This document shows, piece by piece, positions 2,219-47,300 of a stretch of DNA of 64,000 nt. Location of the stretch: contig NW_026857129.1 in NCBI RefSeq assembly GCF_026571515.1, positions 1 through 64,000 of the forward strand, read 5' to 3'. Under the pieces are notes generated by a model. It was not told the DNA's origin. It worked only from the letters and a program-made list of their open reading frames with translations, and made no database searches. Position numbers and translations under genes: made by a program. The DNA is from Ruditapes philippinarum (taxonomy: Eukaryota). Each line of letters begins with the position of its first letter. The first letter of the stretch is position 1.

Positions 2219-2232
2219 CACACGCGTACGCG

Positions 2233-2278
<46 letters not shown>

Positions 2279-2306
2279 ACACACACAACACACACACACC
2301 ACACAC
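2219..2306. repeat. (CG)n/(CA)n microsatellite
   Basis: Seen directly. Confidence 0.95.
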
Positions 2307-2378
2307 GTTATGTTACCTCTAAAGTTTTAAATATAATTAAAATAATTAAAATAAATTCACATCTTTTCACCATTGTAG

Positions 2379-2482
2379 CTGTTGACGATTTAGTCAACGA
2401 AGAACATGAAGGGGAATTTGAAAACATCAGCTTTGAAAGGGCGACGGAGACTTCAGTACCAAAAGAATGGCTTTTCCAACTG
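2379..2482 (+). CDS. PARP14-like exon (phase 1-0), probable C-terminal half of an upstream RRM
   Basis: cattgtag|CT GTT GAC ... CAA CTG|gtaagc; encodes AVDDLVNEEHEGEFENISFERATETSVPKEWLFQL. Confidence 0.7.
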
Positions 2483-5400: not shown

Positions 5401-8400
5401 TGAAGCCATGATCTTCCCTGCTGATGGCACCCTCTTGAATTTCTTCGGTGGGGGTGCGCCAGGATGCTTCCACTGCATGCTTTTTTATTCTGGATAGAAG
5501 TGATGGACCCATGTTTCATCCTGAGTTACGATCCGGTAGATAAAGTCAGGTTCATCCTCGTAGCGAGACAAAAGATATCTTGAAATGTCAAGCCTGGTCC
5601 GTTTCTGATCGTCAGTCAACTATCTGAGGACTCATCTAGCGTAAACCTCTGACACGCCATAGACATCAGTCAGAATTGCCTGAACTGAACCAAAGCTTAT
5701 ACCCACTTTCCAAGCAACGCTTTGCAGGTCTCGCCTTCTGTCGCACATGACCAGATCGTGCACAGTTTCGGCAGTTTCATCGTTGGTGGCCTCATGTGGC
5801 CGCCCAGGCCGCTCATCATCTCCAATGCTCTCCCTGCCCTTCTTAAATTCACCAGCCAATTTTTTCACAGTGCTATAGGAGCGGGAATGGATTCCTTGGG
5901 TGACATCACTTTTCTTACAGAGGTACTTAATGACGGCTCTGATTTCAACTTTCTCAATTTGTTCTAAATGAAACACCCTTCTTCTGATCAAATTGTGTTT
6001 TATGTTACTTTATGTGAGTAAAACCGCGTGTAACTCGATCAGTAATCTTGAAAATCGGTATCGACGTATCGTGTGCAAATGTGAGTGAAGTGGCTTCAAG
6101 TAATTCGGGCCGAGAACTTTTTGATCATACCTCGTACACTACACTACACTTGAAGAAACTTATAAGTGTCTCAGTAGAAAATTGCAAATGTTTTTTAATA
6201 GTTTGAAAATTATATATACGAGTAATTACAAAAATGTACATTTGTGTATATAGATATATATAGGAATAAGAACAACTAGGCTGTTTATCATGCAACGGCC
6301 GTTTTCAGTTGGGAGACAGGTACGAGTTCTTTCCAGTGAACAGCTCAAATGTTCTTTTTTTTTAAGAGATAGCGCTTACTATGTATTAAATATTTTCCAA
6401 TCAATTAAATTTACATTATTTGAATCTTTTTGTCCGGCCGAAGGCCGCTCTGTTTTTCAGTTTCATTTTCTGTAAAATTTACAGGGAAAAACTGAATACA
6501 AGAAGAATTTTTATTGGTCATTTTAAAATAACATGAAATCTTGGAATCTCATTGGCCATTCTAAAGTAAAATGTAAAGAATAGTTCTTGTCATTCTAAAG
6601 TAGTTCTAAACGAAAATGTAAAAGGAAAATTTTAAAATAAAATGTACAAGATAGTTCTTTAACTTTCTAGTTAAATTACTCAGATATTTAGATTCTGTTT
6701 ACAATACATTTTATAGTGGGCAGCTTGTTTATTTTACGCAAGAACTTATGGATTTTATTTTACACAAGACTTGAGTTTTAAATTTCGTCCAATATAAGGA
6801 TAATAATATTGGAACTTATCAGGTACCCTTAGTTTATGATGTTCAGTAAGTGTCTTACATATTTTATGATTACTGATATGTTCAATTGATAAATGTTTAT
6901 AATTTTAATAAAGTTTTGCATATTATGTATTTATAGAAATAATTGCCTAACCGACCTCGCAAATGTTGGTGGAAAAAACTGAGTTTATTAGTTTGTTTAG
7001 AAACACACACATCTAAAAGTGTTCCAACTAACACATGCAAGTTAACCAGTTTTACTTCGGCCGAGTAATTTTTCTAGAGATATTTCTTGTTCCTAACCTT
7101 TGAGAAATGCAAACCTTCCCAGATGACCAAGACAGAAAATAGCAAAACCTGCTAAAACATGGGACGCCACAGCTTGTAAATTATTGTTCCCTTTTGATGA
7201 TATCAATTATTTATGGTAATGCGCTCATGTGAATGAACAGCATGTTCCACATAGCTCTACTTAAAAATAGTAAAAAATCTGTTTAAACCAAAACGCTACT
7301 ACATTATCTTAGACCCTCTTCTGTAATCGGACTATATGATCAATTAAAAGTGTATTTTTTAAACTCAGTTATAGTCAACTTCAAATAATAAATTATTTTA
7401 GATGTCTCAGGCACAAATGAAACACCGTTCACATTAAGAATACGAGGGCTGCCAGCAGATACAAATCAACAATACTTAGATTTGTATTTCAATGACGATG
7501 ACCTGTTCGGAGATTGTAAAATATGTAAAGTGTCCCTTGAAACAAACGAAACATCAGCTCTTATTTATCTAGAAAGCAAGGAAGGTAAGACAAATCTTAA
7601 ATATCGTTTATCATTGTGATTTGTTGTTAGCTGAATGAAATATTTGATTTAAATTTACAGTAAAAATACAATAATGAATCTAGATCATTTCACTGATGTT
7701 GTAGAGACAATAATAAGAAATGTGTAGAGTTTGCGCATCTCGTTGTATATCATGGTGACATTAAGTCCAACAGATACTGTAAAGTATGAAGGGCATCAAA
7801 CACATAAACTATCTTGGCACTTGTAGCAGCTAGCAAAGCAATCTTTGCTATTAGTTTTTCTTTCGTGGAGCAATCTTTGCTATTAGTTTTTTTTGTGGAT
7901 ATACAAGACTTAAATGGCTTGTTTTATAACTACTTCAGCATAGGGTGTCATCGTTAGTTATGATACACTCATTGAACTGAGAAGAAGTACAATAGATCCC
8001 CGCATTATTTACAAAAAAAACCCCAACAAAACAAACCATTTAAGGCCGGACATGGTGTATCTTAATGTTTCTGAAAATTAGAACATTAAACTGCTACAAA
8101 ATGGATGTGTTTGAATGATTGTTGGAAAAATATTTGGAGATAAGTTGACAGTACTAAACTATTTAGGTACGAAAATCCATATGATAGACATGAATAGAGA
8201 AATAAATAAAATAAAAATAAAAAATGAATATTTAAATAAATCTATTGTATGATATTGTCAATAAAATTTTAAGATGCTTCTTCAATCATCAGTTAATTTA
8301 TAGTTATTGTCATAGAGTACGCTATCAAAAAGTATAATAATTCTTAATCGTTTTTTGGATTTGCAAATCATTTAGCTAAATGTGTATCTGAATTATTGAG

Positions 8401-11400
8401 TATATTATGAGTTTTGGGTCAATTTAGATATTATTTTGTAACCCATATGTCAACTACATTGAGCGTTCTCATCACACTTTTGTTTGTATAAATATTCCTT
8501 TCAGAGATCGTTGATCTTTAACATTTAATAAAGAATTTCTATAGATTTAGAGAAAATCAAGGAAATGGCGCCACTAGATATGGACGGTACAATGGTGTCG
8601 GTTGAAGAGTATACAAGTGTTTGCAATGAAGAGCCAACATCCGTTCATCTGCACACCATTGAAGTCACAGGACCACCAAATTCCAGTATCATATCCGAAA
8701 GAAACAAATCACTTTTATCGATGTACTTCAAAAATTCGAGAAAATCGGAGGGAGGAAAGATTTCTGAAATAAAATTTGAGTCAAATAAGGCTTTAATTCA
8801 ATTCGAAACTGAAGAAGGTATTGTGAATAACTTAAGTACAAGTATAAGAAGAATGTTTCATAATTTTGAATCAAAGTAATTTTATTGCACATAAGTAGCA
8901 GAAAAGTATAAATGTAAATGGTTCCTTCTTTGTTTACATATACATCTGCATGTATGTATTGTTCAGTTTTATATAGAAAACCCCGCTAGATATTTTTCAA
9001 CCATGTCTGGATTGATTATCGTAATTAATTTTGAATGTTTTCAGTTGCTCAAAGAGTTGTTGAAAAAGAAAGCCATCGTTTAAGTGGTGTTGAATTGACG
9101 GTAAAATTGTACAACCCACCAATAGACAAAATCGTTGAAAGTGAGCACGAACAGACTTCAATAGTTTTATCAAATCTACCAGAATCGATTGACGCCCAGT
9201 ATATAGAACTCTTTTTTGACGATGAAGAAATATTTGGCGAAGGTTTAGAGGTATTGTTGGTAACATTTAATGACGATCATTCTTCTGCTATTGTGGAGTT
9301 TAAAGACAAAGACGGTAAGAATTCATTTAAGAATTTTTGCTTCACTTGTAACATTTTCCTTAACTTATAGTATCTTCACATAATATCTTATTTGCAAGGT
9401 TGCGTGAAATTATTTACCATTTTTGTTCCATTTAATGTATTTTTACGAAATAATTTTGTTTCGTTTCGTTGGGGTTTTAGACACTCTGACGCAGAAACGG
9501 ACTTTCCAGCTATACTGGAAGAGGATGATGAAAGGTGTTTTTTCCATGCTAGAGAGGGTACCTGACCACCTACCTTTCATAAGCTACCCGGATAACTTCC
9601 TCACATGATCGTGAATCAAAGTCCCTTGCGGGATTCGAACTCACAGTGGTGAGGGGCACGTGATTTGAAGTCACGACAAACTCGGCAAAGGACAGGTCTA
9701 AACGTAGAAAGACATGCCTGGTGTGTCAACTTAGACATGCTGCGTATGTTAATATGAAATTACCCTTGATGAAGTATTTTCCTATCTATGTTTAATTATG
9801 TACCCTTTGGTTTGTCAGTTTACAATTCACACAAACCTACTATTCTGTAAGAAATTTATGTACTTATTTGCCTTATTCAGCTACACATACCATTGCATAA
9901 TATCTAGAGTTGTTCAGGAAAATAAATCCATAATGATTTTAAAATTCCATTTTATTTAGTCCCGCCCCTTGTTTTTTCGTTTAGGGCACACGCATTGTTT
10001 TACTTGGGAATCATACGCCGTTTTTAATGGAATGTCACTTCCGTATCACTTTGAAGGTTCCATGATAACCGCCGTATAAAGTTATCTGCGGATGTTTCAA
10101 AATTCCAAATTTCACCATTTTATGTCAAATGTTGAATACTGCTTAAGCCGGTGATAGGAGGCGTGAACGCTAACTTGCACTTTACTATACCGTTCATGAA
10201 CAGCCCAATGAAACCGAGCCGGCAACATTTTCAATTTGTCGTTTTTTGCGTTCTTTGTGTTCTTTCAGGGTTATTTATTTCTCTTTATTTTATGTATTTT
10301 TACGCGTTGATTTTGGTGTTTTATATTCTACATTTCAAGTTTTGTTACTAAATGTATTCAACTTCAGTTGTAAGCAATATATCCTAAGCAAGGAATTATC
10401 TTTTTTAATTGTCAAAGCTGCAATAAAGGTACTGAATGGACCGTCTTTAAAAATGGAAGATCGTGAAATAAAAATACAAACCTATCTACCTGAAAAAGTG
10501 TGCAAGCCAATACGGAATGGTATAGAAGTTCATGGGCCACAACATATCGTCTCAGACACAAACATCAAAATGTTGAAAAAATATTTTGAAAGCCAGCGGT
10601 TTTCAGGTGGTAGTGAAATTATTGATTCTTCCATATGTCCTGGATTGGCATGTTTCACTTATGTGAGCGAAGAAGGTATTTATAATTGATCAAACAAGTG
10701 TTTATTTAAAATCTAAGTTGTATTGTTTGGAAATATTTACCAGAGACTGATTTAAGTTTCGAAATTTTTTTCGTTAGTTTTGGTAATTTATTACAATTAA
10801 TCTATGGATTGTAATGATAGTATATAGTTATGCATAATTACGACTCGATGTTCTTGTTGTAAGTAATGTTGGATTGCAATCGCGAAGTTGCAATTTCGAA
10901 TCCTCGATTAAGCATAAGTGAAGAAACAACATTTGTTTTGTTTCTGATGTCTTTTTCTTTATTTTTTATGTATTTGATGTATATAGGGTTTATACCTTCA
11001 AACTGGGAAGTTGCAAGTTCGAATGCTCGATTCGTTTCCGATGTCTAAACTATTTTGTTTTCAATAATATGCAGCATAAGTGGAAATAACAATCGTTTTA
11101 CTTCCTTGTAACTGAGGCTAGTGAGACAAGTGTTGTGGTTTTATCTTTTAAGTCATTTAAGTGTTGTAATTAAGGAAGTAACAACACTTTAGGGAAATTT
11201 TATATATGTTTATAATTATTATTCTTAAACAATTTTCAAACATCCAAGAATATGTTAAATATGTACTGCAAAATTTATTCGCATTATAAGTAATCAGTAA
11301 GATATATGCATTCATTTCTTACTGAAGAATTAGGTTTAGAATTTATCGAAAATAAATTTCTAATTACCTCCCTTTATCTACATGATATGTAAATTCGGCA

Positions 11401-14304
11401 ATAATTTTACAAATAATGCTCTTTAGAACTAATAATAACTAATAATAATGATAGATCTGCATTTGAACATCATATTTATGATATTAACCATAAACAAATG
11501 AGTTACAGGATCTTTCAGTTATGCATAAAGCATGCATACTGTTATGCCATATTGTAAATCCATATGATTTACTTCGAAGTCGGCTTAATACCGACAAAAG
11601 GCCATTGAACATTCAAATGTCTCAGGTCAATATTGCCAAACAAAAATACATTTGAAATGTTTAAAGTATTACTTTAGCTACTTTAATAATATGTTATTCG
11701 TAATGATAGTGTGAAAGCTGAAAGCATCTCGAATGAATTGTCATGTTTAAAAATATTACATGAATAAAAAACTATTGTTTACTGTTTAACAGTTGCCAGA
11801 AGAGTTGTAGATCGAAAACATACGTTTAAAAATCACCCACTTGACGTTAATTTGAGAGAAATGAATAAAGTTGACAAACAGGGTCTACATCCATCAGCAG
11901 ATAAGTCTCTCAACACAATAAATGTCCTAGGAATCCCAAAAGAAATTGACAAGGAGTACTTGATATATTTCTTTGAAAATCTAGATGATGACATAGAAGT
12001 GAAAGAATTATCACTTTGTGATAAAAGTAGAAGAGCTACTATTGAATTTTCAACTTTAAAAGGTATATCATTTTCAAAAATAAAAATGCTTTGCAACGAC
12101 ATAATTCTTTGTTGTATTGTGATGAAGTCTTCAAACTGGTACATGTGTAACTGTATGTGTGGTTATACCATTTACAATTAACTTTGACCCAAACAATTTG
12201 TTTCTCTATTGTCTACATATGTTTTCATCAATATTATTATAGTTATCTAATATCAAATTTATTTTCATCACATTGAATCGTTTTGTTTTATAAAATCGCT
12301 TATCAAATAATTAAAGAGTTTGTACTAATAAAAAAGTAATATTAAATAAAGTATCCCTTCAATCGCTTGTATATTGTTTTGCTAAAAATCTTGCGGCTTT
12401 TAATGAAACTTTTTACTTAAATGAATTTTTAACAATTCACATATCCTATCTAGCGGTACAAATAGTTATGGACAAAAAGCCTTTAAACATAAAAGGTACC
12501 GAATTGATAATTGAGCAATGGAAACCGATGAAAATGTGCACAATATCTGTACAAGGGCCAGATGATATTCAACAGTACATGGATAAACTGGAGCTTTATT
12601 TCAAAAACAGAAAATCGGGAGGAAACTCCAAAATAATTGACAGCTGGGTAGACATGGAAAAAGATGCAGCATTTTTCACTTACGAAGAAGAAGCCGGTAT
12701 ATGATTTAATTCAAATTTATTCTTACATTTTATTTCACTATTGTAAACTTTAACATCGGGGCCTGAGTTAACATTTGCTTAGTGGTTAAGGTCGCCAACT
12801 TAAAACCACTGTTGGTTTTAACCCCGTCAGAAAGTCGACATATGGCCTTTACAGTGTCGGTATATCATTGAAACAAAACCGAAAAAGAAATAATTCTTTT
12901 TATTTGATTTTAGTTATAAATACAAGATTGCATTTGAGAAAAATGCTATGCCACCGCATTAATACCTAAGCTCTAGGCCTTTTGGGCATTTACAAGAAGG
13001 TATTTTAAGTTTTTGAAGCCTTGTACCTTGTACCTACAGACAATAAGATGACCCCAGGGCTATAATTTGAACAATCTTGCTAGAGGTTCACTACACAATG
13101 TTTCATGCAAAATATCTAACCTCTAGCATTTGTCAATTGCTAGAAGAAATTTTTTTAAAGTTTTTATTATATACATATAACGAAAACCAATGACCCCCGG
13201 GGCAGGGCCGATTTTGACCCCAGGGCTATAATTTGAACAATCTGGGTAGAGGTCTACAACACAATGCCTTATGCTCTAGGCCTTTTGGGTCTTTACAAGT
13301 AGGTATTTAAAGTTTTTACTATATGTACATATAGTGAAAATCAATGACCCCCGGGCGGGGCCGATTTTGACCCTAGGGCTATATAATTTGAACAATCTTG
13401 GTAGAGGTCTACCAGGCAATGCCTTATGCAAAATATCTAAGCTCTAGGCTATTTGGGTCTTTACAATAAGGTATTTTAAGTTTTTACTATATGTACATAT
13501 AGTGAAAATCAATGACCCCGGGGCAGGGCCGATTTTGACCCCAGGGCTATAATTTGAACAATCTTGGTAGAGGTCTACCAGACAATGCCTTATGCAAAAT
13601 ATCTAAGCTCTAGGCCTTTTGGGTCTTTACAAGAAGATTTTTAAATTTATTCTTATAATTCCTTTTGGTTGCCATGGCAACCAGATTTCTGCATGGAATG
13701 AAATTCTTTGAACAACTTTGGAAGCCCTTCACCCAAGGATCAATCCTGCCAAGTTTGGTTGAAATTGGACTATTGGTTTTCACAAGAAGATTTTTTACGT
13801 TCACTATATAATCTATATAACAATGACCCGGGGCGGGGCCTATTTTGACCCCAGGGCTATAATTTGAACAATGTTGGTAGAGGTCTACCAGACAATGCCT
13901 TATGCAAAATATCTAAGCTCTAGGCTATTTGGGTCTTTACAATAAGGTATTTTAAGTTTTTACTATATGTACATATAGTGAAAATCAATGACCCCGGGGC
14001 GGGGCCAATTTTGACCCCAGGGCTATAATTTGAACAATCTTGGTAGAGGTCTACCAGAAAATAAATGCCATATGCAAAATATCTAAGCTCTATGCCTTTT
14101 GGATCTTTACAAGAAGATTTTTTAAATTTATTCTTATAATTCTTTTGGTTGCCATGGCAACCAAATTTCTGCATGGAATGAAATTCTTTGAACATCTTTG
14201 GAAGCTCTTCACCCAAGGATCAATCCTGCCAAGTTTGGTTGAAATTGGACTAGTGGTTTTTCACAAGAAGATTTTTAAGTTCACTATATAATCTATATAA
14301 CACA

Positions 14305-14368
<64 letters not shown>

Positions 14369-17300
14369 AATCGCTATATGCCACCGCATCGCAGATGCTG
14401 CGGTGGCATAATAATACGTCTTCGAAATATTTTTTTAGCTTCTTTTTTTCAATAAATGTTTTTTTCTAAACAAATGAAATAATTAAATTATCTGAATCAA
14501 AAATATATTCATGAATTTTATAAATTATGTAATGTAAACATTGCATCTAAAAGCAGATTTTGGATTATTTTTGCACGTCGTCAATAAAGATACAATTACA
14601 TAAAAACACTCACATGCATAAACTTTACACTTCATGACCAATTTTAAATTTCTGGCTTCATTAAAAATCATTTCTTACTGATGGAAGACAATTCTCTTCG
14701 TACCCGAAAAATGGACAGTATTACTGCCTGTAGTTTACCAAGATTTTATATCATGGAACCAGGCTAAAATTAAATCATGCATAAACACGTTATCTCCATC
14801 TAAAGGGGAACTGTTTAGCATTTGAACAAAACGCATCGGTGGAAGTGCTATTGCATTGTACTGTCATTAAACATCTGAATTTTAAAATATATCCATTTGT
14901 TGACTTTAGAAACTAAGAAACAAGTTCGTATTGAAGAAATTTAAAGTTTTGTATTTTGAGATAGTTTGGATAGTGCTATGCCGACATAGTTCTGGTTTCA
15001 AAAACTTAAATAGCCGCCTTTTATATAATAAAGCGAGCTCACACGTATGCTGATTTATTTTGGTAAAATTTTGTAACGGGTCTGATGCCTTTTATATACT
15101 ACGTTTATACTCAAATTTGATCGTTCGTCATTTGCTTATTAAAAGTTTTAATATATCAAGTAGTCGGGATAAAATTGAAAAATGTTCTAGGCATTGTAAT
15201 AAAACATTACGAGCAACACTGTCTATATATATACATAGTGTAAATATTTAATATTTAAATTTTAGTTGCAAAAAACGTAGTCCAAAAGGGGCAACACAGA
15301 TTGGGAAAACAAAAGTTGAACGTTCGTTTATGTACCGAAACGATGAGAAAAGATACTTCAAATGAACAAGATCAAGAGTTCTTTACTGAAATAAAACTTC
15401 AAAATTTACCAAAACAAGTGACAGAAACGCACCTGAAGGTATTTCTCGAGGGTCAAGATATGGCAGAAGAAATTGCAGAATTCAATGTTGTAAATGTGGA
15501 TCTTCGGCCTGGAAATGATTCTGCAATTATTGAATTGGACAATCCTGAAGGTATAAAATAAATATATAAGTATTTGGTAAATATGTTTAAACAATTGTTG
15601 TACATTTTCTGTTTAAATGGTACTAAATAGTTTCTACTGAAAAAAAAAATATAAAAAAATCTGATACGAGTTCACTAAACATTTCAGTTGCAAAACTTTT
15701 GTGTGAAAGACGCACACTTCATTTGAAAGATGTTGAAGTATCAGTGGAACGATTCATACCAAGGAAAGTTAATTCATGTACAATAGCAGTTTCTGGGTTG
15801 CCAAGAATTGATGAACAACTTGAACTTCTTGAAATGTACTTTAAAGGCAAGAGGTCAAAAGGCAATTCACAGATTGTTAATAAATGGGTAGACCAAAAAA
15901 GAAACGAAGCGTATTTTACTTACCAAAGTAAAGAAGGTTTGTTATTTCTACTAATTGACAGTAAGACATCATGGGAGCAAATTATATTTGTTTGCAATTT
16001 TAATTTAATAGTTTATATTTTGATTACATGCGATTTAATTAAATATATTGTATCATATCAAACATTTGTTTTAACGCGCCCAAACAGCATAATAAGCTTT
16101 TTTTAATTTGAAGTATGAAAGAGCAATGTAGCTCTAAAAGAGTGTAGACAGATAATGTTTCATGCATCTTTAAATAATAAATGCGTCGCATTTACGGGGT
16201 AATTGATTATATGTAGCTACACATTTATGTCAAATATTTTTAATCGTTTTTGATTGTAGTTGCTGAACGGGTTGCTGCCAAAACAGATCATGTGTTTGAC
16301 CGACATACTTTGAACGTTTCTCTGTTTACGGAAGACAACATGAGTCATGATTTAACGAAAAAAATACGTGTTTCAAAACTACCAGATGATATTACAGAAA
16401 TGTACTTACAGACGCTTTTTGAACAACAAGAAATGCCATTTGACTTCAATGTTGTCAGCGTTATATTGGATTCCAAAGAAGCTTCTGCAATTATAGAGTT
16501 TGATTGTCCCGAAGGTGAATTTTTAATACATACACGATAACTGCACGCAACTAATAAAGCTATATTTTAATTTTGATACTATAAAGTATACATTTTTTTC
16601 AAAGCATAAAGACTGTTGTACCGCTGTTGTCATACTAGTTTTCCATTTTGTTGATATTATAATTCAGGTGTAAATAAAAACTATCGATTAATTCTACTTT
16701 GGTTTGACATGGTGCAGGCGGTCTTGAGATATGTATAAAAAGGCCGGTCAGATAGGAGAGTTTCATTTCAGTCTGAGCACACAAAGGCCCTCGACGTAGT
16801 AAGATCATACCAGTTGAGAAACAATCAGTAAATTATCTTCTCTGTTCATTGCTACCGGAATTTTAGGAGCTTTTTATCTCTGCATACATGTTCATTCTGG
16901 ATATGCTAAAACTATATTTTCGAGGGCTACACCAGTGAATATTTTGTCGTGGATGCCCGGCCAGAGTTAACAATAAAAAAATTTGCCGTGGCAGCAACCT
17001 TGCGGATAAGATACGAAATAGGTTGTAATTAATCAATGTAAACGCTATTAAACGTGGAAGTGGTCTATATGAATCGTGACAGACGAAATGGTCCTTTACA
17101 AAACTTGTAAATGGTCCATATTTGGACAGGAATGATATAATATTTTCCGGAACGTGAAGTTTTTTTTATCAGTTTTGTACATTGTGCGCCATTTCTGCAC
17201 GATCCTTACTTCAAACGTAGATGGTTGATAGCAGGCCCTTTCTTAACGTTTCAACTACCGTATACGACGGTGTTTACCATTTTGCAGGTGGTTTATCGTA

Positions 17301-38300: not shown

Positions 38301-41300
38301 AGCAAATAAAAGTGACATACGGCGATTTTTACGTCGTGCAAAAGTATCTACCACAACGTCAGCCTGAATCCCCCTGTCTCTGTGAATTTGCAAAAGTCCT
38401 AAGCCCGAGAGACGACCAGTGGTCATTGTTGACCGCAAGAACGTCTTCAGCCTTCTCATGCTGCTAAATGAACGTTCAGCGCTAGCGGTAGACACTGGCA
38501 TTGCCAGGTGCAAATGGAGGCACCTGTTAACATTTGGTTACAGCTCTGTCGGTAAATCCTGTAGCACAGATTCTATTGTTGACGGAGCCTGCAACATCGA
38601 AGATTCGCACCGTGTCTCCCAGCATCCACATTTGCACAAAAAGGTTTTCCCGATCGTCCACCAAATCCTCTTGTACGATAGAATAAATTTCATCCATCCG
38701 TTGACAGTCCAAGTCGACTACCCTGTCTGGCAAGAGAAACTATCCATCGTATCCATCGTTATTCTGAAGAAGGCGATTTTCTATCTTGGAAACAAGGTGA
38801 TCCACCAATGGCAGATACATGTTGATCCGCCAGTACTCTAATGGAGTTTGAGAGGGTGCATTAGGGCGATTTTCCCAGTGCTTAATTTATTTATTTATTT
38901 ATGGGCGAGCGTTTTCATTAGTATCATTTCATCAATTTTTAAATTTACAGAAATTAATGCCTTTTCTTCTTATTTTAGATTTTTGTTTCTCAATTTACGA
39001 ATCGTTACGAACTAAAAACTAAGATGTTATCAGTTACAACGCAGTCATGACTGTCATCTTTGCTCAATGTTCGCGTAGCAGTCAAACGTCTGCATGATAT
39101 CATCTTCGCACGTGGTTCTGTTTCTAGCGCCACAATGAATCGCTTGGAAGTGACTGTCATTTACTTATAAAACATAATACAAGAAAACTTATTTGTTTTG
39201 AGCGAATATGCATATATCACACGGAAAATTGTGCTACGCTTTTGTTGCAATTGTTCATATCTCAACCTGGTATATAGCATATTCATTCAATCATAATAAG
39301 CATATATCATCTAATTCTATGCAATTTGGTTCCACTGTGTATAAGCAGTAAATATTCATATATATTCGTGTTAGTTCTTTACTGAATTTATTTAACGAGT
39401 TGAATAAAATAATATTTTGCTCCCGAGACATAATATTATTTTTTTTCAACTCGTTCAATAAGAATATATTCAGTATTTGAATAAAACAATGTTTTCCTCG
39501 CAAGAGGCTCGCTTAATATGATTTTATTCAACTTGTTCAATAATTTCAGTATTGAACTTACACTAATTCATTATCCTCTACTTATCACATAATCGTGTTG
39601 ATTTTAAAATTTGATTTTTTTTTCATTGACGCGACTAAAGTGTTAAAGTGTGATAGAATGACGTTATGGTTATAATGCTACTTTACATGTCATGAAAAAC
39701 AAGAGACGTTATGTGATTTATTTAATAATTTTATGATATGTTATTTTGTATGTTTATGACCATATTCAACGCATATTTACTTTATGCCTATACATGTGTT
39801 GAACTAAAAGAGATATACAAATATATATTTTTAAACTTACACAATAATGAATAAAAGAACTCAATATACTGTAATGTTTATCTGTACCTAAGAACAATAG
39901 CCATTTGCTTCATGGTCGCTGCATCTGTGGCCTTGTCGAATGGAGCGACGTTGCATGCCTCCACAATTGTTTTACTGATGATCTCGCCACATATAGAGAT
40001 TAACTCGTTTTGGATTTTTGGCGAGGTGTATTTCGTACGAGGATTGCCGTTTTCAAGGTGGTCTCGTAAGACTGTAATATGCTTTGCCTGAGGTTGAAGA
40101 ATAGCGGCGAAGTTACTCCTGTCGTCTTGGTGACCCCGAATCGCAATATTCTGCCTTCCGCACAATATCAAAGTGTCCACAATAGCAACTAATATTTTCC
40201 GGTTTTTCTCAACGGTCTGTTCATGTGCGCTCGATAGACTGCATACTATGTCCTTTTTGTCTCCGGTTATCACAGAAATAAAGTTGTGGGCAGCCTCGCA
40301 GGATTCTCTATGCAATTTTGAAACTGCATGAGCTTGAATGGTTTTTCCGATGTTGCTGGGGTCGACTAGAGGGACAGTTGCGAGTGATTTTTGTTTAGAG
40401 ATTTCACCTTTACCACTGAATAAACAAGATTGCATTTGAGAAAAATGCTATGCCACCGCATTAATACAACACTAAATAGTAGTGTAGGAACAGATTTTTT
40501 TTGTTTCTATACAATTGAAGATTGTCATAATGCATAGATCCCTGACCTATCTAATTCTTATTATCAGATTAGTGGTTAAATCTATTGTTAATCCAATAAA
40601 AGATCAGAGTAGGAATATATCAATGCACTTGAGTCTAGTGAATTTGGTGGTGAAGGTCATATTTCACACAGCCTAAATTTCATGACTACATCAAAGGACA
40701 ACACAGTAAGACACTTTGTCAAAATCTAGGTCAGCTGATATCAAAGTTCACTTTACATCTTAATCTGTGCACATGGTTCAAATTTCATAGCTGTACATCA
40801 AAGGACAAGAAAGTAGGTCACATCATCAAAATCTAGGTCACCTGATATCAAAGTTCAATTTTACAACTAAAACTGTGCACATGGTCAAAATTTCATTGCT
40901 GTACATCAAAGGACAAGAAAGTAGGTCACTGTCCCCTTGTGCAAGGAAAAATTGTGACCCAAGGGTTTAATTCAAAACAATCTTGAGACATGTCCACCAA
41001 ACAACATCAAATATCTAAGCTGAAGCTTTCTCCCATTCAGTAAACATTTGTTTTATTTTCTTTTTTACTATGTGTACATAATGAGAATAACTGCCCCTGG
41101 GCAGGGCCAATTTTGACACCAGGGGAAAAATTTGAACAACTTTGGTAGAGGACCCATAGATGATATTATATAATATAGCAAACATCACAGATCTATGCCT
41201 TGTACCTTCAGACAAAATATTTTTTTAATTTTTTTACTATATGTTCATAATAAAAATCAATGACCCCCCGGGGCGGAACCAATTTTGACCCCAGGGCAAT

Positions 41301-44300
41301 AATTTGAATAATCTTGATAAAGGTTCACTTCGCAAAGTCACATGCCATATACTTAACCTCTAGTCAAATATCAAAGCTCTAAGCCATGTACCTTCAGACA
41401 TTAAGATTTTTTAATTTTTCACTAAATGTACATATTGAAAATCAATGACCCCTGGGGTTTGGGCCAATTTTGACCCCAGGGCTGTAATTTGTACAATCAT
41501 GCTAGAGGTTCACTACACAATGTTTCATACAAAATATCTTAACACTAGCCTTTGTAAATTTAGAGATGATTTTTTAATTTTTTACTATATACATATATGG
41601 AAAACCTATGGCCCCCGTGCAGGGCTAATTTTGACACTAGAGGCAAAATTTGAACAAATTTGGTAGAGTACCTATAGATGATATCATTTTACAAATATTA
41701 AAGCTCTAAGCCTTGTACCTTTTTCTATATTTATATATTGAAAATCAATGACCCCCGGGGCGGGGGCAATTTTGACCCCAGGGCTATAATTTGAACAATC
41801 TTGCTAGAGGTTCACTTCACAATATTTGATTCAAAATATCTAACCTCTAGCATTTGTCAATTGATAGAAGAAATTTTTTAAAAGTTTTTACTATAAGTTT
41901 TACTTCACTTCAGTGTTGTTATATTTTCTGGTCCTTCGGGATCATTGATGCCAACACTATAAAGTGTTGAGAATTGAGTACCGCTCAAGCCGGTGCTAGG
42001 GGGCGTGAGGGATGTTGCACTTATTCATTATCCCTCATGTACAGACTCAATCAAACCGAGTCTGCAATTCTTATGTTATTTTGTTGTGATTAATGCTTCC
42101 GAGGGATCACTTTGTTTCCAGAATTTTTTACTACATACATACATAAGGAAAACCAATGACCAACGGGGCGGGCCGATTTTGACCCCAGAGCTATAATTTG
42201 AACAATCTCGGTAGATGTCTACCAGACAATGCCTTATGCAAAGTATCTAAGCTCTAGGCCTTTTAGGTCTTTACAAGAAGGTATTTGAAGTTTTTACTAT
42301 ATGTACATATATTGAAAATCAATGACCCCCGGGGTTGGGCCGATTTTGACCCCAGGGCTATAATAATTTGAACAATCTTGGTAAGGGTCTACTAGACAAT
42401 GCCTTTTGCAAAATATCTAAGCTCTAGGCCTTTTGGGTCTTTACAAGAAGGTATTTTAATTTTTATGTAAAGGGAACTATAGGCCTAGCGATACTTTTTA
42501 ACTAACAGAGATAGGTCAAAAACATTTGTACTTAAATACAAACAACTAGATTCTAGACCTAGCTCTAATCTAGTTAATCAATCACAAAAGGTTAATAAAT
42601 ATAAGCCCCATACTTGCTCGGAAATGCGTAATGATGAACAGAGTCCCATTTTGCGTTTAGAAGATGGGTCTTTTCGTTAGCGTCTAGTGACTGCTTCAAG
42701 AAAACATCTCCGTAACAAGGGTCACAACATTTATCGCTCGCCATTTTAAAAAATAAGCGCGCTATGTAACGTTTTAAGGGGAATATCATTGATATTTTGT
42801 TCACATTTGCTTCAACTATTACCCTGTAAGCCATTAGTCTGCACACAGCAATACATGTATTAGAATAATACTTTAACCATCTTTGGGTTTCCATTTTATC
42901 TGTTTGCAAGTTTTACTCTTTTTTTATGTACAGGATTAATCATGTAATAATGTTTATAACTTTCTATATAAGAATTGATATCTAAAGATATACCTGACAT
43001 AAAATTGTAAAATCTATTGAAATAAGTAGTAAGAAGTTACAGATTAATGGCATAATATGATATACTTATAATCTTAAAAGAAGCTGTCCAAGGCTTTTGA
43101 CCGTGGGGAAGGTATGCAATAAATATCTATCATTGTAACAAACAAGTTGTATGATCTCTGTATCTTTAAATCGTGAATCTATAAATCGTTCATCAATATA
43201 TATTGATTTACAAGCAAGAAACAATATAAGATAAACCGTCAAACACCAGCGGACTTGGAAGCAATATGGATACTTTACTAGCACTTGTAAATATGCTACT
43301 CAACTTTTACTAAGCACCATAAGTTTTTTTTATTATCACAAGTATAAAACATATTTCTTTTCAATTTTTGATAATTCCTATTTAGCAATGTTTTGAGATA
43401 GTCCCTTGACATGACTCCTTGTTGACTTATCCATTACAACTTGTATTGGTAGCATAAAAAGCATGCACCCCCATATTTTCATGTTTTTGATGGGGTGTAC
43501 AATCATATGACTTTTGTTATACTGCGACATTACCGGTTAAATGTCATTGAATGGCTTACATTTCTTACATCTGTCACTTTGATAAGGCGAATGCTAACAT
43601 AAGGCGGTATTTGAGAGAAGTAGAAGTATGGAGGGCTGTAGGGATGGTTCAGCTTGGGGCACCTTCCGCCAGGTAGGTGCGGCGCTCGGTGTACACCACA
43701 TAGTCTTTACCAGAGCCTGTGAGATATACTGGCTACATGGTGCACCCGCTAGGAGGCATGCTGGAGGCAGGCAAAGGGTCGCAACGCCAGCTCAGGACCG
43801 GTTTATGGTTGTTAAGCCACGTCGAGAAATGTTTTCGACAGCAACTTCTTTTCGAAATGACATTGCTTATGCTGCGGAGGTCCGTGTTTCCAAGCAAACG
43901 GTACGTATAAGGCTGCATGAAGGTGATTAGTGTCTAGAAGACTTTGCATACGTATCCCCTTGACGCATCGACATACAAAGTCCCGTTTGGAATGGACCAT
44001 GGAACATTCACGATGGACCATGCACACTGGAGACTCGTTCAGTTCACTTATGAGTACAGGTTCTGCCTAGACTTCGCAGATCAGCGTGCCACAGTCTGGA
44101 GAAGACAAGGTGAACAGTTTCATGCTGCAAATATTGCATGACCGCTACGGAGGTGGGTCAGTTGGTGTGGGGAGGTGGCATCAGTTTTGATGGACGACCT
44201 TGCTGTGCTAGAAAGAGACACATTGACAGGTCAGCGCTACATAGACGACGTGTTAGACTACCAGGTTAGGCTGTATGCTGGAGCAGTCAGTCTGCGATCA

Positions 44301-47300
44301 CTTTATTTCAATGGACGATAATGCTCACCTTAAAGGACCAGGGCGGTCCAGGACTACCTAGCGAGGGAGTCTATTGAGCGCATGGACTGGCCAGCTCGCT
44401 CACCTGACTTAAATCCAATAGAACACATGTGATATGTGCTGCAGGTTAGAATTTCAACTCGTCAGCTGCAATCCAGCTTGGAGCTATGTTGGTCCAAAAT
44501 TGGGCAGCCATACCCGTTAGAACGATCAGATACCTAATCGAGAGTATGAGAAGATGCTGCCCAGCTGTCCTTGATAGCCACACACACGGTACTAAGTATA
44601 AAACTTAAAAAAACACCAGAAGGAAATAACAACAAAGTAACAATTAAACAAATTTGAAAAACACGCTGCATGTTCTGAAAACTTCAAAGTGGGGAGGGGG
44701 GGTCATCCTCTTCTTTAGCACAAAATCAATGTAAAATTAATTTATAGGGATAAAGTCGTCCTTCAGCTGAATTGATAAAAAAGTAAATCAAAATTTAAAC
44801 CTTTCGCACTGATTTTAATTTGTTTGTTTGTTTGTTTGTTTCATTTTACGCCTTTTTCAACAGTATTTCAGTCATATAGGCGGGTAGTTTCCTAACCATC
44901 GTTCCTGGAGAGTTACACCAGTACTAGACAACCTTCCTCCGCGCTAAACTACCAAAGCATCTCCCGGGGATCGAACCCACGCCAGAGAGGTAACTGGATT
45001 AGAAGTCATCGACTCTAACCCCTCGACCACGGAGGCGGTGCACTGATTTTAAAAAATTAAAGTCAAAGAATGGTCACACTGAAATATATGGTGCTTAGCA
45101 AAAGTTGAGTAGTATATAAACAATCCAATCATCGTTATCATCGTAGTAAAAGTTATAGACGCCTTAAAGGAAGGCATAGTAGCAAGAAAAACACATACAA
45201 AGGTCCAATGCAGCAAGAAATTATATTTAAACAATTCAGACCGAAATGCCTTAAGAACGGTCCGTCATAGAGTGTTCCACTTGATCCGGTCTGTCAGAAG
45301 CAACCAAAATAGGAAAGCAACAAAATAACATGAAGTTTGCTGACCCGGTTAGTGTCTGTACATGAGGGATAATAAAAGTGCAACATCACTCACGCCCATC
45401 TAGCGCATGGTATTCAATTTAACAAAGTCAAGCAATTCAAAGCAACGACTTTAGAGCAATAATCCAGAAAGACAGGACTTGCAACAGGATTGAGTCAAAT
45501 ATGAATCAGGAATTCAGGGGTCTATTTTTCTTTAATTCGTTTTCATTGAATTGAACGTTGATTACCTAAAAACTTACACTCAGTACATTGTCCTTCATTA
45601 TATGTTATATTATATACAGTACCTTTCTGTAAAATGAATGACATGTTATAGATAATTGTCCGAAAGTAAATTCAAACTTTCTTCTTAAATTGCAGACTTC
45701 ACAAAGTTTAAAGAGGCATGCCGACTTAACACTTTGGAAGGTGCAAGGCTCACGATTGATAAAATACCTATATCTAGCTGTATTTATCTTGCAAACATTT
45801 CTCCTGAAATAACAGAAGATACTCTGAGATATTACTTTGAAAGCAAATTTGGAGAAAAGGGAAAAGTTGATAAAGTACTTTTGACCAAATCAGAGGGAAT
45901 TTGTCTAGTTTATTTTGAAAATTACAAAGGTAACACAAAAATTCTCAAATGTTAAACTGTATAAAAATCGGTGAATAACACAAGTAAAAGCAATGCATAC
46001 TGTATTACATACTTATTATAATAATAATCCATATTGCTTTTGCCTTCGTCGTCTCCGTTTGTCTGTCCACTCGCATTTAAAGTGTCCGGGTTTCACATGT
46101 CAATTTGCTTGTGGGATTTTGACGAAACTTCACAGGGGTGATCAATACAATACCTAGTTGTGCATATTGTCGACAAGTTCCACTTCCCTGTACAAAATAG
46201 CTGCCAGAGTTAGAAATAGAAAATCAATGATGGCTGTGACAGGTAAATTGCCTGGCGGGATTCCTCTGAAACTTCACAGGAGTGTTGAGTACCAACCCTT
46301 GTTATGCGTATCTCTGGAACGTTCCTCTTCGCTGCAGAAAATGGCCACTAAAGCTAACAACAGAAAAATATTGTCTGACTGTCACAGGTCAAGCTGCTGG
46401 AACCCTACGGGGTTGATCTGTACCAGTCTTAGGTGTGCTGTAGTCAGCATTTTCCGCTTCACTGCACAAAATTGCAACAAGTGATAAATATTTGAAAAAC
46501 CTTGACAAGCTTTCACAGGTCAAACTGCTTGGGAGACTTCGACGAATATTATACTAGCGTGATCAGTACAAACCCTTGTTGTGCATATCGCCGGCACACA
46601 ATTGTTGCTAGATTTGAAAATAGAAAATCCATGCCCTTCTTTCACAGGTGAAAATGCTTGCGGCATTTCGACGAAACTTCATAAGAGCTGTCAGTATAAA
46701 CCTTCGTGTGCAGATGTTCATCACCTTCTGCTTCGCTGCAAAAAATGGCCACCAGAGCTAAAGACAAAAATCCTTAAAAAGGGCTTAAAAAAGAAAAATC
46801 TTATCGGGTTGTCACAGGTTAAATTGTCGGCAGGATATTGGCAAAACTTCACGGGAGTTATCAGTACCAATCCATTGTATGCATATTGCTGGCATGTTCT
46901 GATTTACTACACAAATCGACTACCAGTTATAATGACGGCAATCCTTATCTGTATTTTACTGCGGGTGGGATTTTGGCAATATTTCACACAACCATTGCCG
47001 TGCATATCGCTAGCATGTTTTGCTTAGCTGCAAGAATTGACTGCCCGAGCTAAGACTAGAAAAATCCTGTCCGGCTTTGACAAGTAAAACTTCTGGTTGC
47101 ATTTTCATGCCGCTGTTCTATCCTTCGAGTACATACGTGGGAGACATTTATTATTTTTTGAGAAAAAAGCATTTAAGTTGTTTTTCAAATTATAAATAAG
47201 CGTTAAAAAAATAATATTATGACATTTACAAACAGCAAAATTGAAAACAGAAACGTAATAGTCTGACAATAAGTTTTAAATTATTTGTTTATATATGACG

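What the first reader, a model, noticed from the sequence alone, without database searches (positions are those of the whole stretch)
7402..45929. PARP14-like protein with an expanded array of at least 13 RRM/NID-like domains
Seen: 13 consecutive exons each carry an RRM core (I.V.GLP...L..YF...A.I.F), and the 2379 exon looks like the tail of a further upstream RRM. Known: vertebrate PARP14 has three N-terminal RRMs and is an interferon-induced antiviral mono-ADP-ribosyltransferase. The L..YF....SGG motif is shared with the oligomerising NID domains of IFI35/NMI. Inference: this is a lineage-specific, extended nucleic-acid-sensing or polymerising scaffold coupled to ADP-ribose reader domains, and a candidate undescribed invertebrate innate-immune receptor. 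I cannot tell whether this architecture is already in databases.
Basis: partly seen in the sequence, partly recalled or inferred. Interest (0 to 1): 0.8.

Follow-up and report, generated by a model that had tools for sequence, protein, structure and literature searches.

The report
Clam PARP14-like gene with 14 RRMs
The stretch is the front part of one expressed, already annotated Manila clam PARP14-like gene whose protein starts with 14 RNA-recognition-type domains instead of the 3 seen in vertebrates, an unusual but not unique variant of a known immune-linked enzyme family.

Summary
Window 7402-45929 (+) holds 13 GT-AG exons. All are phase 1-1 and multiples of 3 in length. Each encodes alpha2-beta4 of one RRM plus beta1-beta3 of the next. 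With the upstream exon at 2378-2482 the protein has 14 RRMs.

The exon peptides are 100% identical to, and consecutive in, RefSeq XP_060594497.1, "PARP14-like", Ruditapes philippinarum, 2770 aa. Its order is 14 RRM, KH, 3 Macro, WWE, ART (H-Y-M). So the architecture is already in databases, but I found no paper describing it.

RNA contigs join E7 to E12 exactly as modelled and run on 463 nt past the 19862 donor. I did not see the 19862>45696 join directly. It is supported by the RefSeq model, by a colinear paralogue whose equivalent intron is only 3.8 kb, and by a confident fold in which RRM12 is completed by E13.

The array is RRM0, then five old acidic/basic pairs, then a conserved trio. Long arrays (11-16) also occur in Lingula, Patella and amphioxus, through separate and mostly recent expansions. 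Most invertebrate homologues among the best-scoring, array-biased hits have 3-9.

The immune-receptor or nucleic-acid-sensor function is untested. RNP aromatic residues are mostly missing and the array is acidic. I favour a multivalent protein scaffold.

The same scan noted the pair alternation (s1-811329) and RRM-GTPase fusions (s1-808212) elsewhere in this genome.

The parts
2378..2482 (+). Exon coding alpha2-beta4 tail of RRM0 (RefSeq protein residues 66-100)
   Evidence: Exact 8-mer walk of P0001 on the window. The head of RRM0 (residues 1-65) is absent from the contig.
2624..2689 (+). Short linker exon (P0001 residues 101-122)
   Evidence: Exact peptide match.
7402..7584 (+). E1: head of RRM1 (acidic type B)
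   Evidence: Pfam RRM_PARP14_3 at 6e-4. AG/GT sites in phase 1. Equals P0001 124-183.
8545..8817 (+). E2: tail of RRM1 plus head of RRM2 (type A, YF.N..S.GG)
   Evidence: Pfam RRM_PARP14_1 at 1.6e-5. Equals P0001 185-274.
9045..9314 (+). E3: tail of RRM2 plus head of RRM3 (B)
   Evidence: Pfam RRM_PARP14_3 at 3.6e-8. Equals P0001 276-364.
10418..10675 (+). E4: tail of RRM3 plus head of RRM4 (A)
   Evidence: Pfam RRM_PARP14_1 at 0.14. Profile A1. Equals P0001 366-450.
11793..12062 (+). E5: tail of RRM4 plus head of RRM5 (B)
   Evidence: Pfam RRM_PARP14_3 at 5.6e-7. Equals P0001 452-540.
12454..12696 (+). E6: tail of RRM5 plus head of RRM6 (A)
   Evidence: Pfam RRM_PARP14_1 at 6.7e-4. Equals P0001 542-621.
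15266..15550 (+). E7: tail of RRM6 plus head of RRM7 (B)
   Evidence: Pfam RRM_PARP14_3 at 2.3e-5. RNA contig joint 15550>15688.
15688..15936 (+). E8: tail of RRM7 plus head of RRM8 (A)
   Evidence: Only a weak generic RRM hit in Pfam. 43% identical to RRM6. RNA joints on both sides.
16260..16514 (+). E9: tail of RRM8 plus head of RRM9 (B)
   Evidence: Pfam RRM_PARP14_3 at 4.5e-8. RNA joints.
18425..18673 (+). E10: tail of RRM9 plus head of RRM10 (A)
   Evidence: Pfam RRM_PARP14_1 at 2.5e-3. RNA joints.
19035..19292 (+). E11: tail of RRM10 plus head of RRM11 (first of the conserved trio; SGGG motif)
   Evidence: Pfam RRM_PARP14_3 at 2.7e-7 and RRM_PARP14_1 at 1e-3. RNA joints. AF2 RRM fold.
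19626..19862 (+). E12: tail of RRM11 plus head of RRM12 (conserved 'TT...FLEA' penultimate RRM); weak donor G|GTTGTA
   Evidence: No Pfam hit for the exon alone. RNA contigs end their match exactly at 19862 and run on. Matches the family consensus. AF2 fold.
19863..45695 (.). Intron 12, 25.8 kb, swollen by transposon remains (hAT pieces at 38295-40435 on the minus strand)
   Evidence: Pfam Dimer_Tnp_hAT at 1e-6. The same intron in the paralogue is about 3.8 kb.
45696..45929 (+). E13: alpha2-beta4 of RRM12 plus head of RRM13 (RRM3 type, directly before KH1)
   Evidence: Pfam RRM_PARP14_3 at 8e-10 and RRM_1 at 2.9e-5. Equals P0001 1134-1210.
47306..47518 (.). Run of 213 N in intron 13, ending 10 bases before the E14 acceptor; left untouched
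47529..49229 (+). E14: tail of RRM13, the KH domain stack, start of macrodomain 1
   Evidence: Acceptor ...ttttcag|tt read directly. Pfam KH_PARP14_1 at 1.9e-6. tblastn 99.6% to P0001 1209-1778.
50721..60721 (+). Six further exons inside the window: 50721-50984, 51420-51692, 52009-52110, 53903-54142, about 56636-56860, and 60557-60721. They cover macrodomains 1, 2 and the start of 3. The gene continues on the contig to the stop at 90542 (macro 3, KH8, WWE, ART).
   Evidence: Pfam Macro hits. tblastn of P0001 on the window and on L009-L011. PARP hit at contig 89582-89770.

Best explanation
What it is (shown). Window 2378-64000 is the 5' two-thirds of one protein-coding gene of the Manila clam, RefSeq XP_060594497.1 'PARP14-like'. 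The gene runs on along the contig to 90.5 kb. Its protein has 14 RRMs, a KH stack, three macrodomains, KH8, WWE and a PARP14/15-like mono-ADP-ribosyltransferase domain with an H-Y-M triad.

The RRM region is built from symmetric phase-1 exons. Each encodes the back of one RRM and the front of the next. The order is:
- a divergent RRM0;
- five pairs of an acidic RRM3-type unit (pI 4.1-4.9) and a neutral-to-basic RRM1/NID-type unit (pI 6.6-8.8);
- the trio RRM11-13, which is conserved across PARP14-like proteins and packs against KH1.

How it arose (inferred from identities). A two-exon module was duplicated in tandem long ago in venerid clams; units are now only 9-48% identical. The whole gene was then duplicated (paralogue on contig C9042, dS about 0.17). 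All exons stay open in both copies. dN/dS is 0.26-0.33 for the trio's closing exons E12 and E13 and for E3 and E10. It is 0.41-0.44 for E1, E5 and E11, and 0.70-0.84 for E2, E4 and E6-E9.

How it works (inference, about 45%). The conserved RRM12-13 plus KH stack is the family's partner- or nucleic-acid-binding core. The ten added units form a multivalent string of alternating charge. That string would raise avidity or drive self-assembly through protein contacts, as NID domains do in NMI/IFI35. This would concentrate the writer (ART), reader and eraser (macro) activities on targets during stress or infection. Canonical single-strand RNA binding by the added units is less likely, about 30%.
For: Gene identity and structure:
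- All 13 exon peptides occur exactly and consecutively in P0001, with one junction residue between neighbours. The cluster look-up names the protein and gives a contig of 182066 bases, the length of this contig.
- Pfam on P0001: RRM_PARP14_3 in 12 stretches (320 bits), RRM_PARP14_1 in 6, NID at 43 bits, KH_PARP14_1, KH_PARP14_8, Macro in 3 stretches, WWE, PARP.
- PDB sequence search: the catalytic domain matches human PARP14/15 at 1e-52 and the macrodomains match PARP14 MD1-3. Clam M aligns with human L in 'SLFVAF'.

Transcription and splicing:
- In two runs, coverage is exon-only. GT..AG joints link E7-E8-E9-E10-E11-E12 at my coordinates. One 2128-nt contig carries E7-E12 and a further 463 nt beyond 19862.

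E12 and E13 belong together:
- The family consensus runs across the junction.
- AF2 of residues 994-1334 gives pLDDT 93 and pTM 0.80, with RRM12's alpha2-beta4 supplied by E13.
- The Foldseek top hits are all multi-RRM proteins.
- The paralogue has the same 13 exons in the same order, at 73-91% amino-acid identity over the aligned exon codons, and a 3.8-kb intron at this position.

Unit types and evolution:
- Unit types, pI and identities. dN/dS.
- RNP positions are mostly non-aromatic and the array has net charge -56.
- Oyster PARP14 homologues are listed among antiviral or infection-responsive genes (PMC12803857, PMC9162580).
Against: - I did not see the 19862>45696 junction in reads. The single read-laying run could not hold both sides.
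- Two 2026 raw RNA runs gave no reads on the exons, so expression in those samples is low.
- No binding, oligomerisation, enzymatic or induction data exist for this protein. The scaffold reading rests on missing RNP aromatics, charge and NID similarity only.
- Non-canonical RRM-RNA contacts are known, so RNA binding is not excluded.
- dN/dS of 0.7-0.8 on single exons of about 85 codons is not distinguishable from neutrality exon by exon.
Confidence: 0.85

Rival explanations
1. The long RRM array is an extended nucleic-acid sensor. Many RRMs in line with eight KH domains track a long viral or cellular RNA or ssDNA and direct ADP-ribosylation to it, making the protein an invertebrate innate-immune receptor.
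For: - Human PARP14's RRM-KH string has been proposed to track a long single-stranded nucleic acid (PMC10450202).
- The exon profile matches RNA-binding tandem RRMs such as hnRNP A1 UP1.
- The same RRM type occurs in database proteins next to CARD plus a DEAD helicase (P0071) and next to URGCP GTPases.
- Type A units are neutral to basic, and RRM6, 8, 10 and 11 keep one aromatic RNP1 position.
Against: - RNP2 position 2 is aromatic only in RRM13. RNP1 position 3 is never aromatic. Type B units have none of the three aromatic positions.
- The array carries net charge -56 with pI 5.1.
- No RNA-binding or induction data exist for this gene.
Confidence: 0.3
2. There are two genes, not one: an RRM-only gene ending at E12 and a canonical PARP14 gene starting near E13. 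Automatic annotation wrongly fused them across the 25.8-kb gap.
For: - The intron is very long and full of transposon remains.
- The E12 donor GTTGTA is weak.
- RRM-only predicted proteins exist in other bivalves: Mya 761 aa, Argopecten 930 aa, Potamilus 717 aa.
- I saw no read across this junction.
Against: - E12 ends in the middle of an RRM, with no stop codon in frame before the donor.
- An RNA contig stops matching exactly at 19862 and continues for 463 nt.
- E13 begins with the missing alpha2-beta4. The junction lies inside a domain conserved in 48 homologues and folds with pLDDT above 89.
- Both exons are in phase 1.
- The paralogue has the same two exons 3.8 kb apart.
Confidence: 0.04
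3. The number of RRMs is not fixed. Because every RRM exon is a symmetric phase-1 cassette, alternative splicing yields isoforms with fewer RRMs, and 14 is only the maximum.
For: - All 13 exons are phase 1-1 and multiples of 3 in length.
- Haliotis rubra RefSeq isoforms of 2579, 2491 and 2403 aa carry 8, 7 and 6 RRMs. Patella vulgata isoforms differ by about 105-170 aa.
Against: - In the two clam runs with coverage, the listed joints connect only neighbouring exons E7-E12. No skipping joint is among the best supported, though 19 joints were not shown.
- Only one clam isoform is in the protein cluster.
Confidence: 0.25

Closest known systems
Human PARP14 (ARTD8/BAL2)
   Same: - Same order of KH stack, three macrodomains, WWE and C-terminal mono-ART domain.
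- The catalytic domain matches at 1e-52 and MD1-3 match one to one.
- PARP14-specific Pfam families for RRM1, RRM3, KH1 and KH8 all match.
- The last RRMs pack on KH1, as described for the human model (PMC10450202).
   Different: - 14 RRMs instead of 3. Ten of them are alternating acidic/basic pairs.
- The triad is H-Y-M rather than H-Y-L.
- The RRM_PARP14_2 family does not score.
- WWE is just under its cut-off.
- Interferon does not exist as such in molluscs, and induction is untested.
NMI / IFI35 NID domains
   Same: Type A units share the YF...SGG head. Pfam NID is above its cut-off. The exon profile hits NMI chain 21nh_A at 3.9e-5.
   Different: NMI and IFI35 are small proteins with two NIDs and no enzyme domain. 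Their oligomerisation cannot be tested here.
Multi-RRM PARP14-like proteins of Lingula anatina, Patella vulgata/caerulea and Branchiostoma
   Same: 11-16 PARP14-type RRMs in front of KH, Macro and ART in Lingula and Patella. The Branchiostoma belcheri 13-stretch record is an RRM-only model of 1283 aa.
   Different: Their arrays are mostly of one unit type and contain near-identical copies, up to 95-100% identical, so they are recent and independent expansions. The clam's units are at most 39% identical in exon register, and the strict pair alternation is shared only with Mercenaria.
PARP10 N-terminal triple RRM
   Same: Clade-3 mono-ART with N-terminal RRMs. PARP10 RRM 2dhx matches the exon profile at 2e-6.
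   Different: PARP10 has no macrodomains, has three RRMs in one compact block, and is reported as vertebrate-only (PMC4245714).

Membership tests
PARP14 (macro-PARP, clade 3) | C-terminal ART domain closest to PARP14/15, with an H-Y-hydrophobic triad (no catalytic Glu) | tested here: met
   Pfam PARP at 71.5 bits. PDB PARP14 and PARP15 catalytic domains match at 1e-52. LWHGT and YGVYFA are present, and M aligns with human L. The human triad itself is from my own knowledge.
PARP14 (macro-PARP, clade 3) | Three macrodomains in a row | tested here: met
   Pfam Macro in 3 stretches, 177 bits. Separate matches to PARP14 MD1 (3q6z), MD2 (3q71, 3vfq) and MD3 (4abk).
PARP14 (macro-PARP, clade 3) | WWE domain between the macrodomains and ART | tested here: inconclusive
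   Pfam WWE at 20.1 bits against a cut-off of 21.1, E 8.5e-4, at residues 2508-2555.
PARP14 (macro-PARP, clade 3) | PARP14-type KH domains | tested here: met
   KH_PARP14_1 at 26.3 bits (cut-off 21) and KH_PARP14_8 at 33 bits (cut-off 27). KH1 fold in the AF2 model. The middle KH domains were not scored individually.
PARP14 (macro-PARP, clade 3) | N-terminal PARP14-type RRMs (three in vertebrates) | tested here: met
   The type is met: RRM_PARP14_3 at 320 bits and RRM_PARP14_1 at 150 bits. The number differs, 14 against 3.
PARP14 (macro-PARP, clade 3) | Induction by interferon or infection; mono-ADP-ribosylating activity | not tested
   The only evidence is indirect: oyster homologues are listed among infection-responsive genes.
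RRM (RNA recognition motif) | beta1-alpha1-beta2-beta3-alpha2-beta4 fold | tested here: met
   The AF2 model of RRM11-13 has pLDDT 93. Foldseek probability is 1.00 to Prp24, raver1, SHARP and UP1. The other units are supported by profile only.
RRM (RNA recognition motif) | Aromatic residues at RNP2 position 2 and RNP1 positions 3 and 5 | tested here: not met
   The aligned beta1 and beta3 strings show 0 of 3 in RRM0-5, 7, 9 and 12, and 1 of 3 in RRM6, 8, 10, 11 and 13.
RRM (RNA recognition motif) | Binding of RNA or ssDNA | not testable with these tools
   Needs recombinant protein.
NID (NMI/IFI35 domain) | Match to the NID profile or to an NMI structure sequence | tested here: met
   Pfam NID at 43.2 bits, cut-off 25. 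NMI chain 21nh_A at 3.9e-5.
NID (NMI/IFI35 domain) | NMI/IFI35 architecture (small protein, two NIDs, no enzyme domains) and homo- or hetero-oligomerisation | tested here: not met
   The architecture is that of a 2770-aa PARP. Oligomerisation is not testable here.

The most novel reading that the evidence does not exclude
The PARP14/NMI-type RRM exon is a shuffled, amplified cassette. Bivalves attach arrays of it to several classes of interferon-type effectors, namely macro-PARPs such as this gene and URGCP/VLIG-like giant GTPases. Other invertebrates attach it to a CARD-helicase (RIG-I-like) protein. On this reading the arrays act as a common recognition or polymerisation platform of an invertebrate antiviral system, and alternative use of the symmetric exons tunes their length.
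Probability: 0.3. Interest if true: 0.65.

Novelty: new variant of a known kind. Interest (0 to 1): 0.4.

Why it matters
PARP14 is an actively studied interferon-induced writer, reader and eraser of mono-ADP-ribose. The function of its N-terminal RRMs is still unknown (PMC13224862).

Invertebrates that have multiplied just this part of the protein offer a natural experiment on what these RRMs do. They have done so independently and by different unit types. The clam version is the most useful kind of case: its 14 units are old, diverged, kept open in two paralogues and transcribed, so the array is maintained rather than an assembly artefact.

The same RRM type also sits in front of VLIG-like GTPases in this genome and next to a CARD-helicase in a database protein. 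That points to a shared adaptor role in innate-immune effectors. Binding, oligomerisation and challenge experiments in a farmed, disease-prone species could test this.

It is not a new kind of system, and the protein is already in RefSeq.

Tried and rejected
I therefore could not name the species of P0014, P0020 and P0071, or fetch transcript contigs spanning E12-E13.
- The two raw-read RNA runs (X19, X21) had no reads on the exons, and the listed loose ends did not include the one at 19862.
- Pfam gave nothing at 1e-3 for the LINE-like and Tc1-like ORFs in intron 12. Only the hAT pieces scored.
- No CARD-helicase lies next to RRM exons in the clam genome.
- Mercenaria P0004 is only 36% identical and colinear, so it is not a clear one-to-one orthologue. 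I did not date the array with it.
- Seven literature searches found no paper on RRM-array expansion in invertebrate PARP14 or on RRM-VLIG fusions. The library lacks most subscription journals.
- I did not run the search for homologous proteins, which is costly, because no claim here rests on absence of relatives.
Whole-protein scans used the public record P0001 as the search returned it. The fold used one contiguous part of that record, typed in unchanged.
- I did not fold a pair module. That would have needed a third typed piece of the same protein.
- The N run at 47306-47518 was left as it is.

Full report
**Observation.** The window is AT-rich animal DNA; it is contig C5616:1-64000 of a 1.4-Gb assembly. 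On the + strand between 7402 and 45929 there are 13 open segments with AG acceptors and GT donors. All are in phase 1 at both ends and all have lengths divisible by 3. The exons are:
- E1 7402-7584
- E2 8545-8817
- E3 9045-9314
- E4 10418-10675
- E5 11793-12062
- E6 12454-12696
- E7 15266-15550
- E8 15688-15936
- E9 16260-16514
- E10 18425-18673
- E11 19035-19292
- E12 19626-19862
- E13 45696-45929

Scanned one exon at a time, 11 of the 13 match the Pfam families made for human PARP14 RRMs. RRM_PARP14_3 matches E1, E3, E5, E7, E9, E11 and E13. RRM_PARP14_1 matches E2, E4, E6 and E10. E8 and E12 are too divergent for an exon-level hit.

Each match covers only the first 50-55 positions of an 80-position model. 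Each exon begins with a conserved 'VAxRV...H.L.G..L.V' stretch. So an exon encodes alpha2-beta4 of one RRM, a linker, and beta1-alpha1-beta2-beta3 of the next. A profile of the 13 exon peptides hits solved tandem RRMs across exactly that register: hnRNP A1 UP1 at 3e-7, the PARP10 RRM at 2e-6, and an NMI chain at 3.9e-5.

**Identity.** Searching that profile against 1.8 billion representative proteins gave a top hit of 2770 aa with 14 matched stretches. The exact look-up names it XP_060594497.1, 'protein mono-ADP-ribosyltransferase PARP14-like [Ruditapes philippinarum]', on a contig of 182066 bases, which is the length of this contig.

All 13 exon peptides are found in it at 100% identity, in order, with a single junction residue between neighbours. 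That is what phase-1 split codons predict. All whole-protein work used this public record as the tool returned it.

Residues 66-100 and 101-122 map to window 2378-2482 and 2624-2689. Residues 1-65, the head of a first RRM, are not on this contig, which starts inside the gene. The best matches elsewhere in the genome are 86% and 69% identical.

Downstream, E14 (47529-49229; acceptor read directly) carries the tail of RRM13, the KH stack and the start of macrodomain 1. Further exons in the window, and on the contig up to 90542, give macrodomains 1-3, KH8, WWE and the catalytic domain.

Pfam on the record gives RRM_PARP14_3 in 12 stretches, RRM_PARP14_1 in 6, NID, KH_PARP14_1, KH_PARP14_8, Macro in 3 stretches, WWE (just under its cut-off) and PARP. 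The catalytic domain matches human PARP14 and PARP15 structures at 1e-52, and each macrodomain matches its PARP14 counterpart. The clam residue aligned with human Leu in 'SLFVAF' is Met, so the triad is H-Y-M, a mono-transferase type.

**One gene or two.** I laid four public runs on 14000-19950 (5951 letters).
- Two runs kept as contigs show exon-only coverage and GT..AG joints at 15550>15688, 15936>16260, 16514>18425, 18673>19035 and 19292>19626. This is exactly my model.
- One 2128-nt contig holds E7-E12 without gaps, plus 131 nt before and 463 nt after 19862 that do not lie in the adjacent intron. The weak E12 donor (G|GTTGTA) is therefore used.
- Two raw-read RNA runs had no reads on the exons, so expression there is low.

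I could not see which exon follows 19862. The evidence that it is E13 is indirect but consistent:
- E12 stops in mid-domain. E13 starts with the missing alpha2-beta4 in the right phase.
- In an alignment with 48 homologues, the consensus of the penultimate RRM ('L..G....TT...L..FLEA ... DF......C....L.G..L....VP') runs straight across the junction.
- AlphaFold2 on residues 994-1334 with that alignment gives pLDDT 93.1 and pTM 0.80. It shows three complete RRMs and KH1, with the junction just before alpha2 of RRM12. Foldseek's best matches are all multi-RRM proteins.
- A paralogue on contig C9042 has the same 13 RRM exons in the same order, at 73-91% amino-acid identity over the aligned exon codons. 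Its E12 and E13 are 3.8 kb apart, against 25.8 kb here. The extra length in this gene is transposon debris, including hAT pieces.

**Anatomy of the array.** In domain register:
- The odd units RRM1, 3, 5, 7 and 9 are acidic (pI 4.1-4.9, net charge -3 to -11) and of the RRM3 type.
- The even units RRM2, 4, 6, 8 and 10 are neutral to basic (pI 6.6-8.8). They carry the YF.N..SGG head and are of the RRM1/NID type.
- Identity is 27-48% within the even class, 22-33% within the odd class and 9-32% between classes (only the RRM2-RRM5 pair exceeds 25%).

RRM11-13 are the trio conserved across the family. RRM0 is divergent.

The duplications are old: no two exon units exceed 39% identity. Against the paralogue (dS about 0.17), every exon is open in both copies. 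Pooled dN/dS is 0.51 for the RRM exons and 0.26 for the macro exons. E12 and E13 of the trio, with E3 and E10, lie at 0.26-0.33. E1, E5 and E11 lie at 0.41-0.44. E2, E4 and E6-E9 lie at 0.70-0.84.

**Is 13 or more the normal invertebrate state?** No, but it is not unique either. Among the 150 best representatives, the full-length proteins (with macro and ART) carry mostly 3-6 RRMs, some 7-9, and a few 11-14. Named examples:

| RRMs | Species |
|---|---|
| 3 | Saccoglossus, Glandiceps, Dreissena, a Haliotis paralogue, a Branchiostoma paralogue |
| 4-6 | Mizuhopecten, Potamilus, Sinanodonta, Nucella, Patiria |
| 6-9 | Haliotis rubra, Biomphalaria, Branchiostoma |
| 11-16 | Patella vulgata and P. 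caerulea, Lingula, this clam |

In Lingula, Patella, Branchiostoma and Biomphalaria the arrays contain near-identical copies (up to 95-100%) and are dominated by one unit type. The alternating pair pattern appears only in Ruditapes and Mercenaria. Expansion has therefore happened several times independently.

Haliotis rubra isoforms of 2579, 2491 and 2403 aa have 8, 7 and 6 RRMs. This shows that the symmetric exons can act as cassettes. I saw no skipping in the clam.

Within the clam genome the exon profile finds at least 150 such exons on about 35 contigs. These include the 13-exon paralogue and four clusters of 7-9 on C12507.

**Function.** Shown: family membership, transcription, splicing of E7-E12, and maintenance of all exons.

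Inferred: the conserved trio plus KH stack is the family's binding core. The human model has been proposed to track a long single-stranded nucleic acid (PMC10450202).

For the ten added units I favour a multivalent protein-contact or self-assembly role over canonical RNA binding, for four reasons:
- RNP2 position 2 is aromatic only in RRM13.
- RNP1 position 3 is never aromatic. Position 5 is aromatic only in RRM6, 8, 10 and 11.
- The array has net charge -56.
- The type A units resemble NID domains.

An immune context is plausible. Human PARP14 is interferon-induced (PMC13224862), and oyster PARP14 homologues are listed among antiviral or infection-responsive genes. It is untested for this gene.

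**Side finding.** The same RRM type stands just upstream, on the same strand, of URGCP/VLIG-type GTPase ORFs at a dozen clam loci. Contig C5063 was checked in detail. Database proteins combine six such RRMs with URGCP domains, or a CARD plus DEAD helicase with two or three such RRMs. Transcript continuity in the clam was not shown.

**Novelty.** The protein is in RefSeq, so the architecture is 'in databases'. In seven full-text searches I found no paper describing RRM-array expansion in invertebrate PARP14. A 2026 review of PARP14 structure and evolution does not mention invertebrates. It is a new variant of a known kind.

**Limits.** The N run at 47306-47518 was left untouched.

Noticed in passing
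G000 contig C9042:224271-~312400 (+); loci L014-L018: A second, colinear PARP14-like gene with the same 13 RRM exons. Amino-acid identity is 73-91% per RRM exon over the aligned codons and dS is about 0.17. Its E12-E13 intron is only 3.8 kb, and a PARP hit lies at 312208.
   Followed up: yes
G000 contig C5063:64715-88291 (+), loci L019-L022; also C7283, C13123, C10879, C438, C3685, C4123, C990, C1499, C10571, C9634: Arrays of PARP14/NMI-type RRM exons lie just upstream, on the same strand, of very large ORFs with Pfam URGCP and URGCP_GTPase (VLIG-like GTPases). Here the RRM heads and tails are in separate exons. Splicing of the array to the GTPase was not shown.
   Followed up: partly
database proteins P0014, P0020, P0071 (species not retrievable): P0014 and P0020 are single models with six PARP14-type RRMs plus URGCP and URGCP_GTPase. 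P0071 is CARD_2 plus a DEAD/ResIII helicase plus two or three PARP14/NID-type RRMs, which is a RIG-I-like layout. No such linkage was seen in the clam genome.
   Followed up: partly
window 1-2377 and contig start: The contig begins inside the gene. The first coding exon of the RefSeq protein (residues 1-65, head of RRM0) is not on it. The nearest copies are on C4238 (86% identity) and C9042 (69%).
   Followed up: yes
window 14000-14420 (intron 6): An interspersed repeat next to a (CA)n run has very high depth in all four RNA runs, with 'goes back' joints and many variants. Similar ORF fragments recur in other introns (13280-13444, 41439-41663, 54194-55852). It is probably an abundant transcribed SINE- or MITE-like element.
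   Followed up: no
window 38295-40435 (-), 31851-36425 (-), 43598-44318 (+): Transposon remains fill intron 12. The hAT dimerisation region scores 1e-6, and a DUF4371-like piece scores below its cut-off. LINE-like and Tc1-like ORFs got no Pfam hit at 1e-3.
   Followed up: partly
window 16423-16508 (E9): One contig of run X3 carries six base differences in E9 and a variant joint 16508>18423 with AAGA inserted. This is a second allele or a transcript of a close paralogue.
   Followed up: no
window 47306-47518: A run of 213 N ends 10 bases before the acceptor of the large KH exon. The polypyrimidine tract of that acceptor is therefore mostly unread. It was left as it is.
   Followed up: no
G000 genome-wide: There are at least 63 PARP catalytic-domain matches and at least 150 PARP14-type RRM exons. 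Macro-PARP and RRM-array genes form a large expanded family in this clam, including four clusters of 7-9 RRM exons on C12507.
   Followed up: partly
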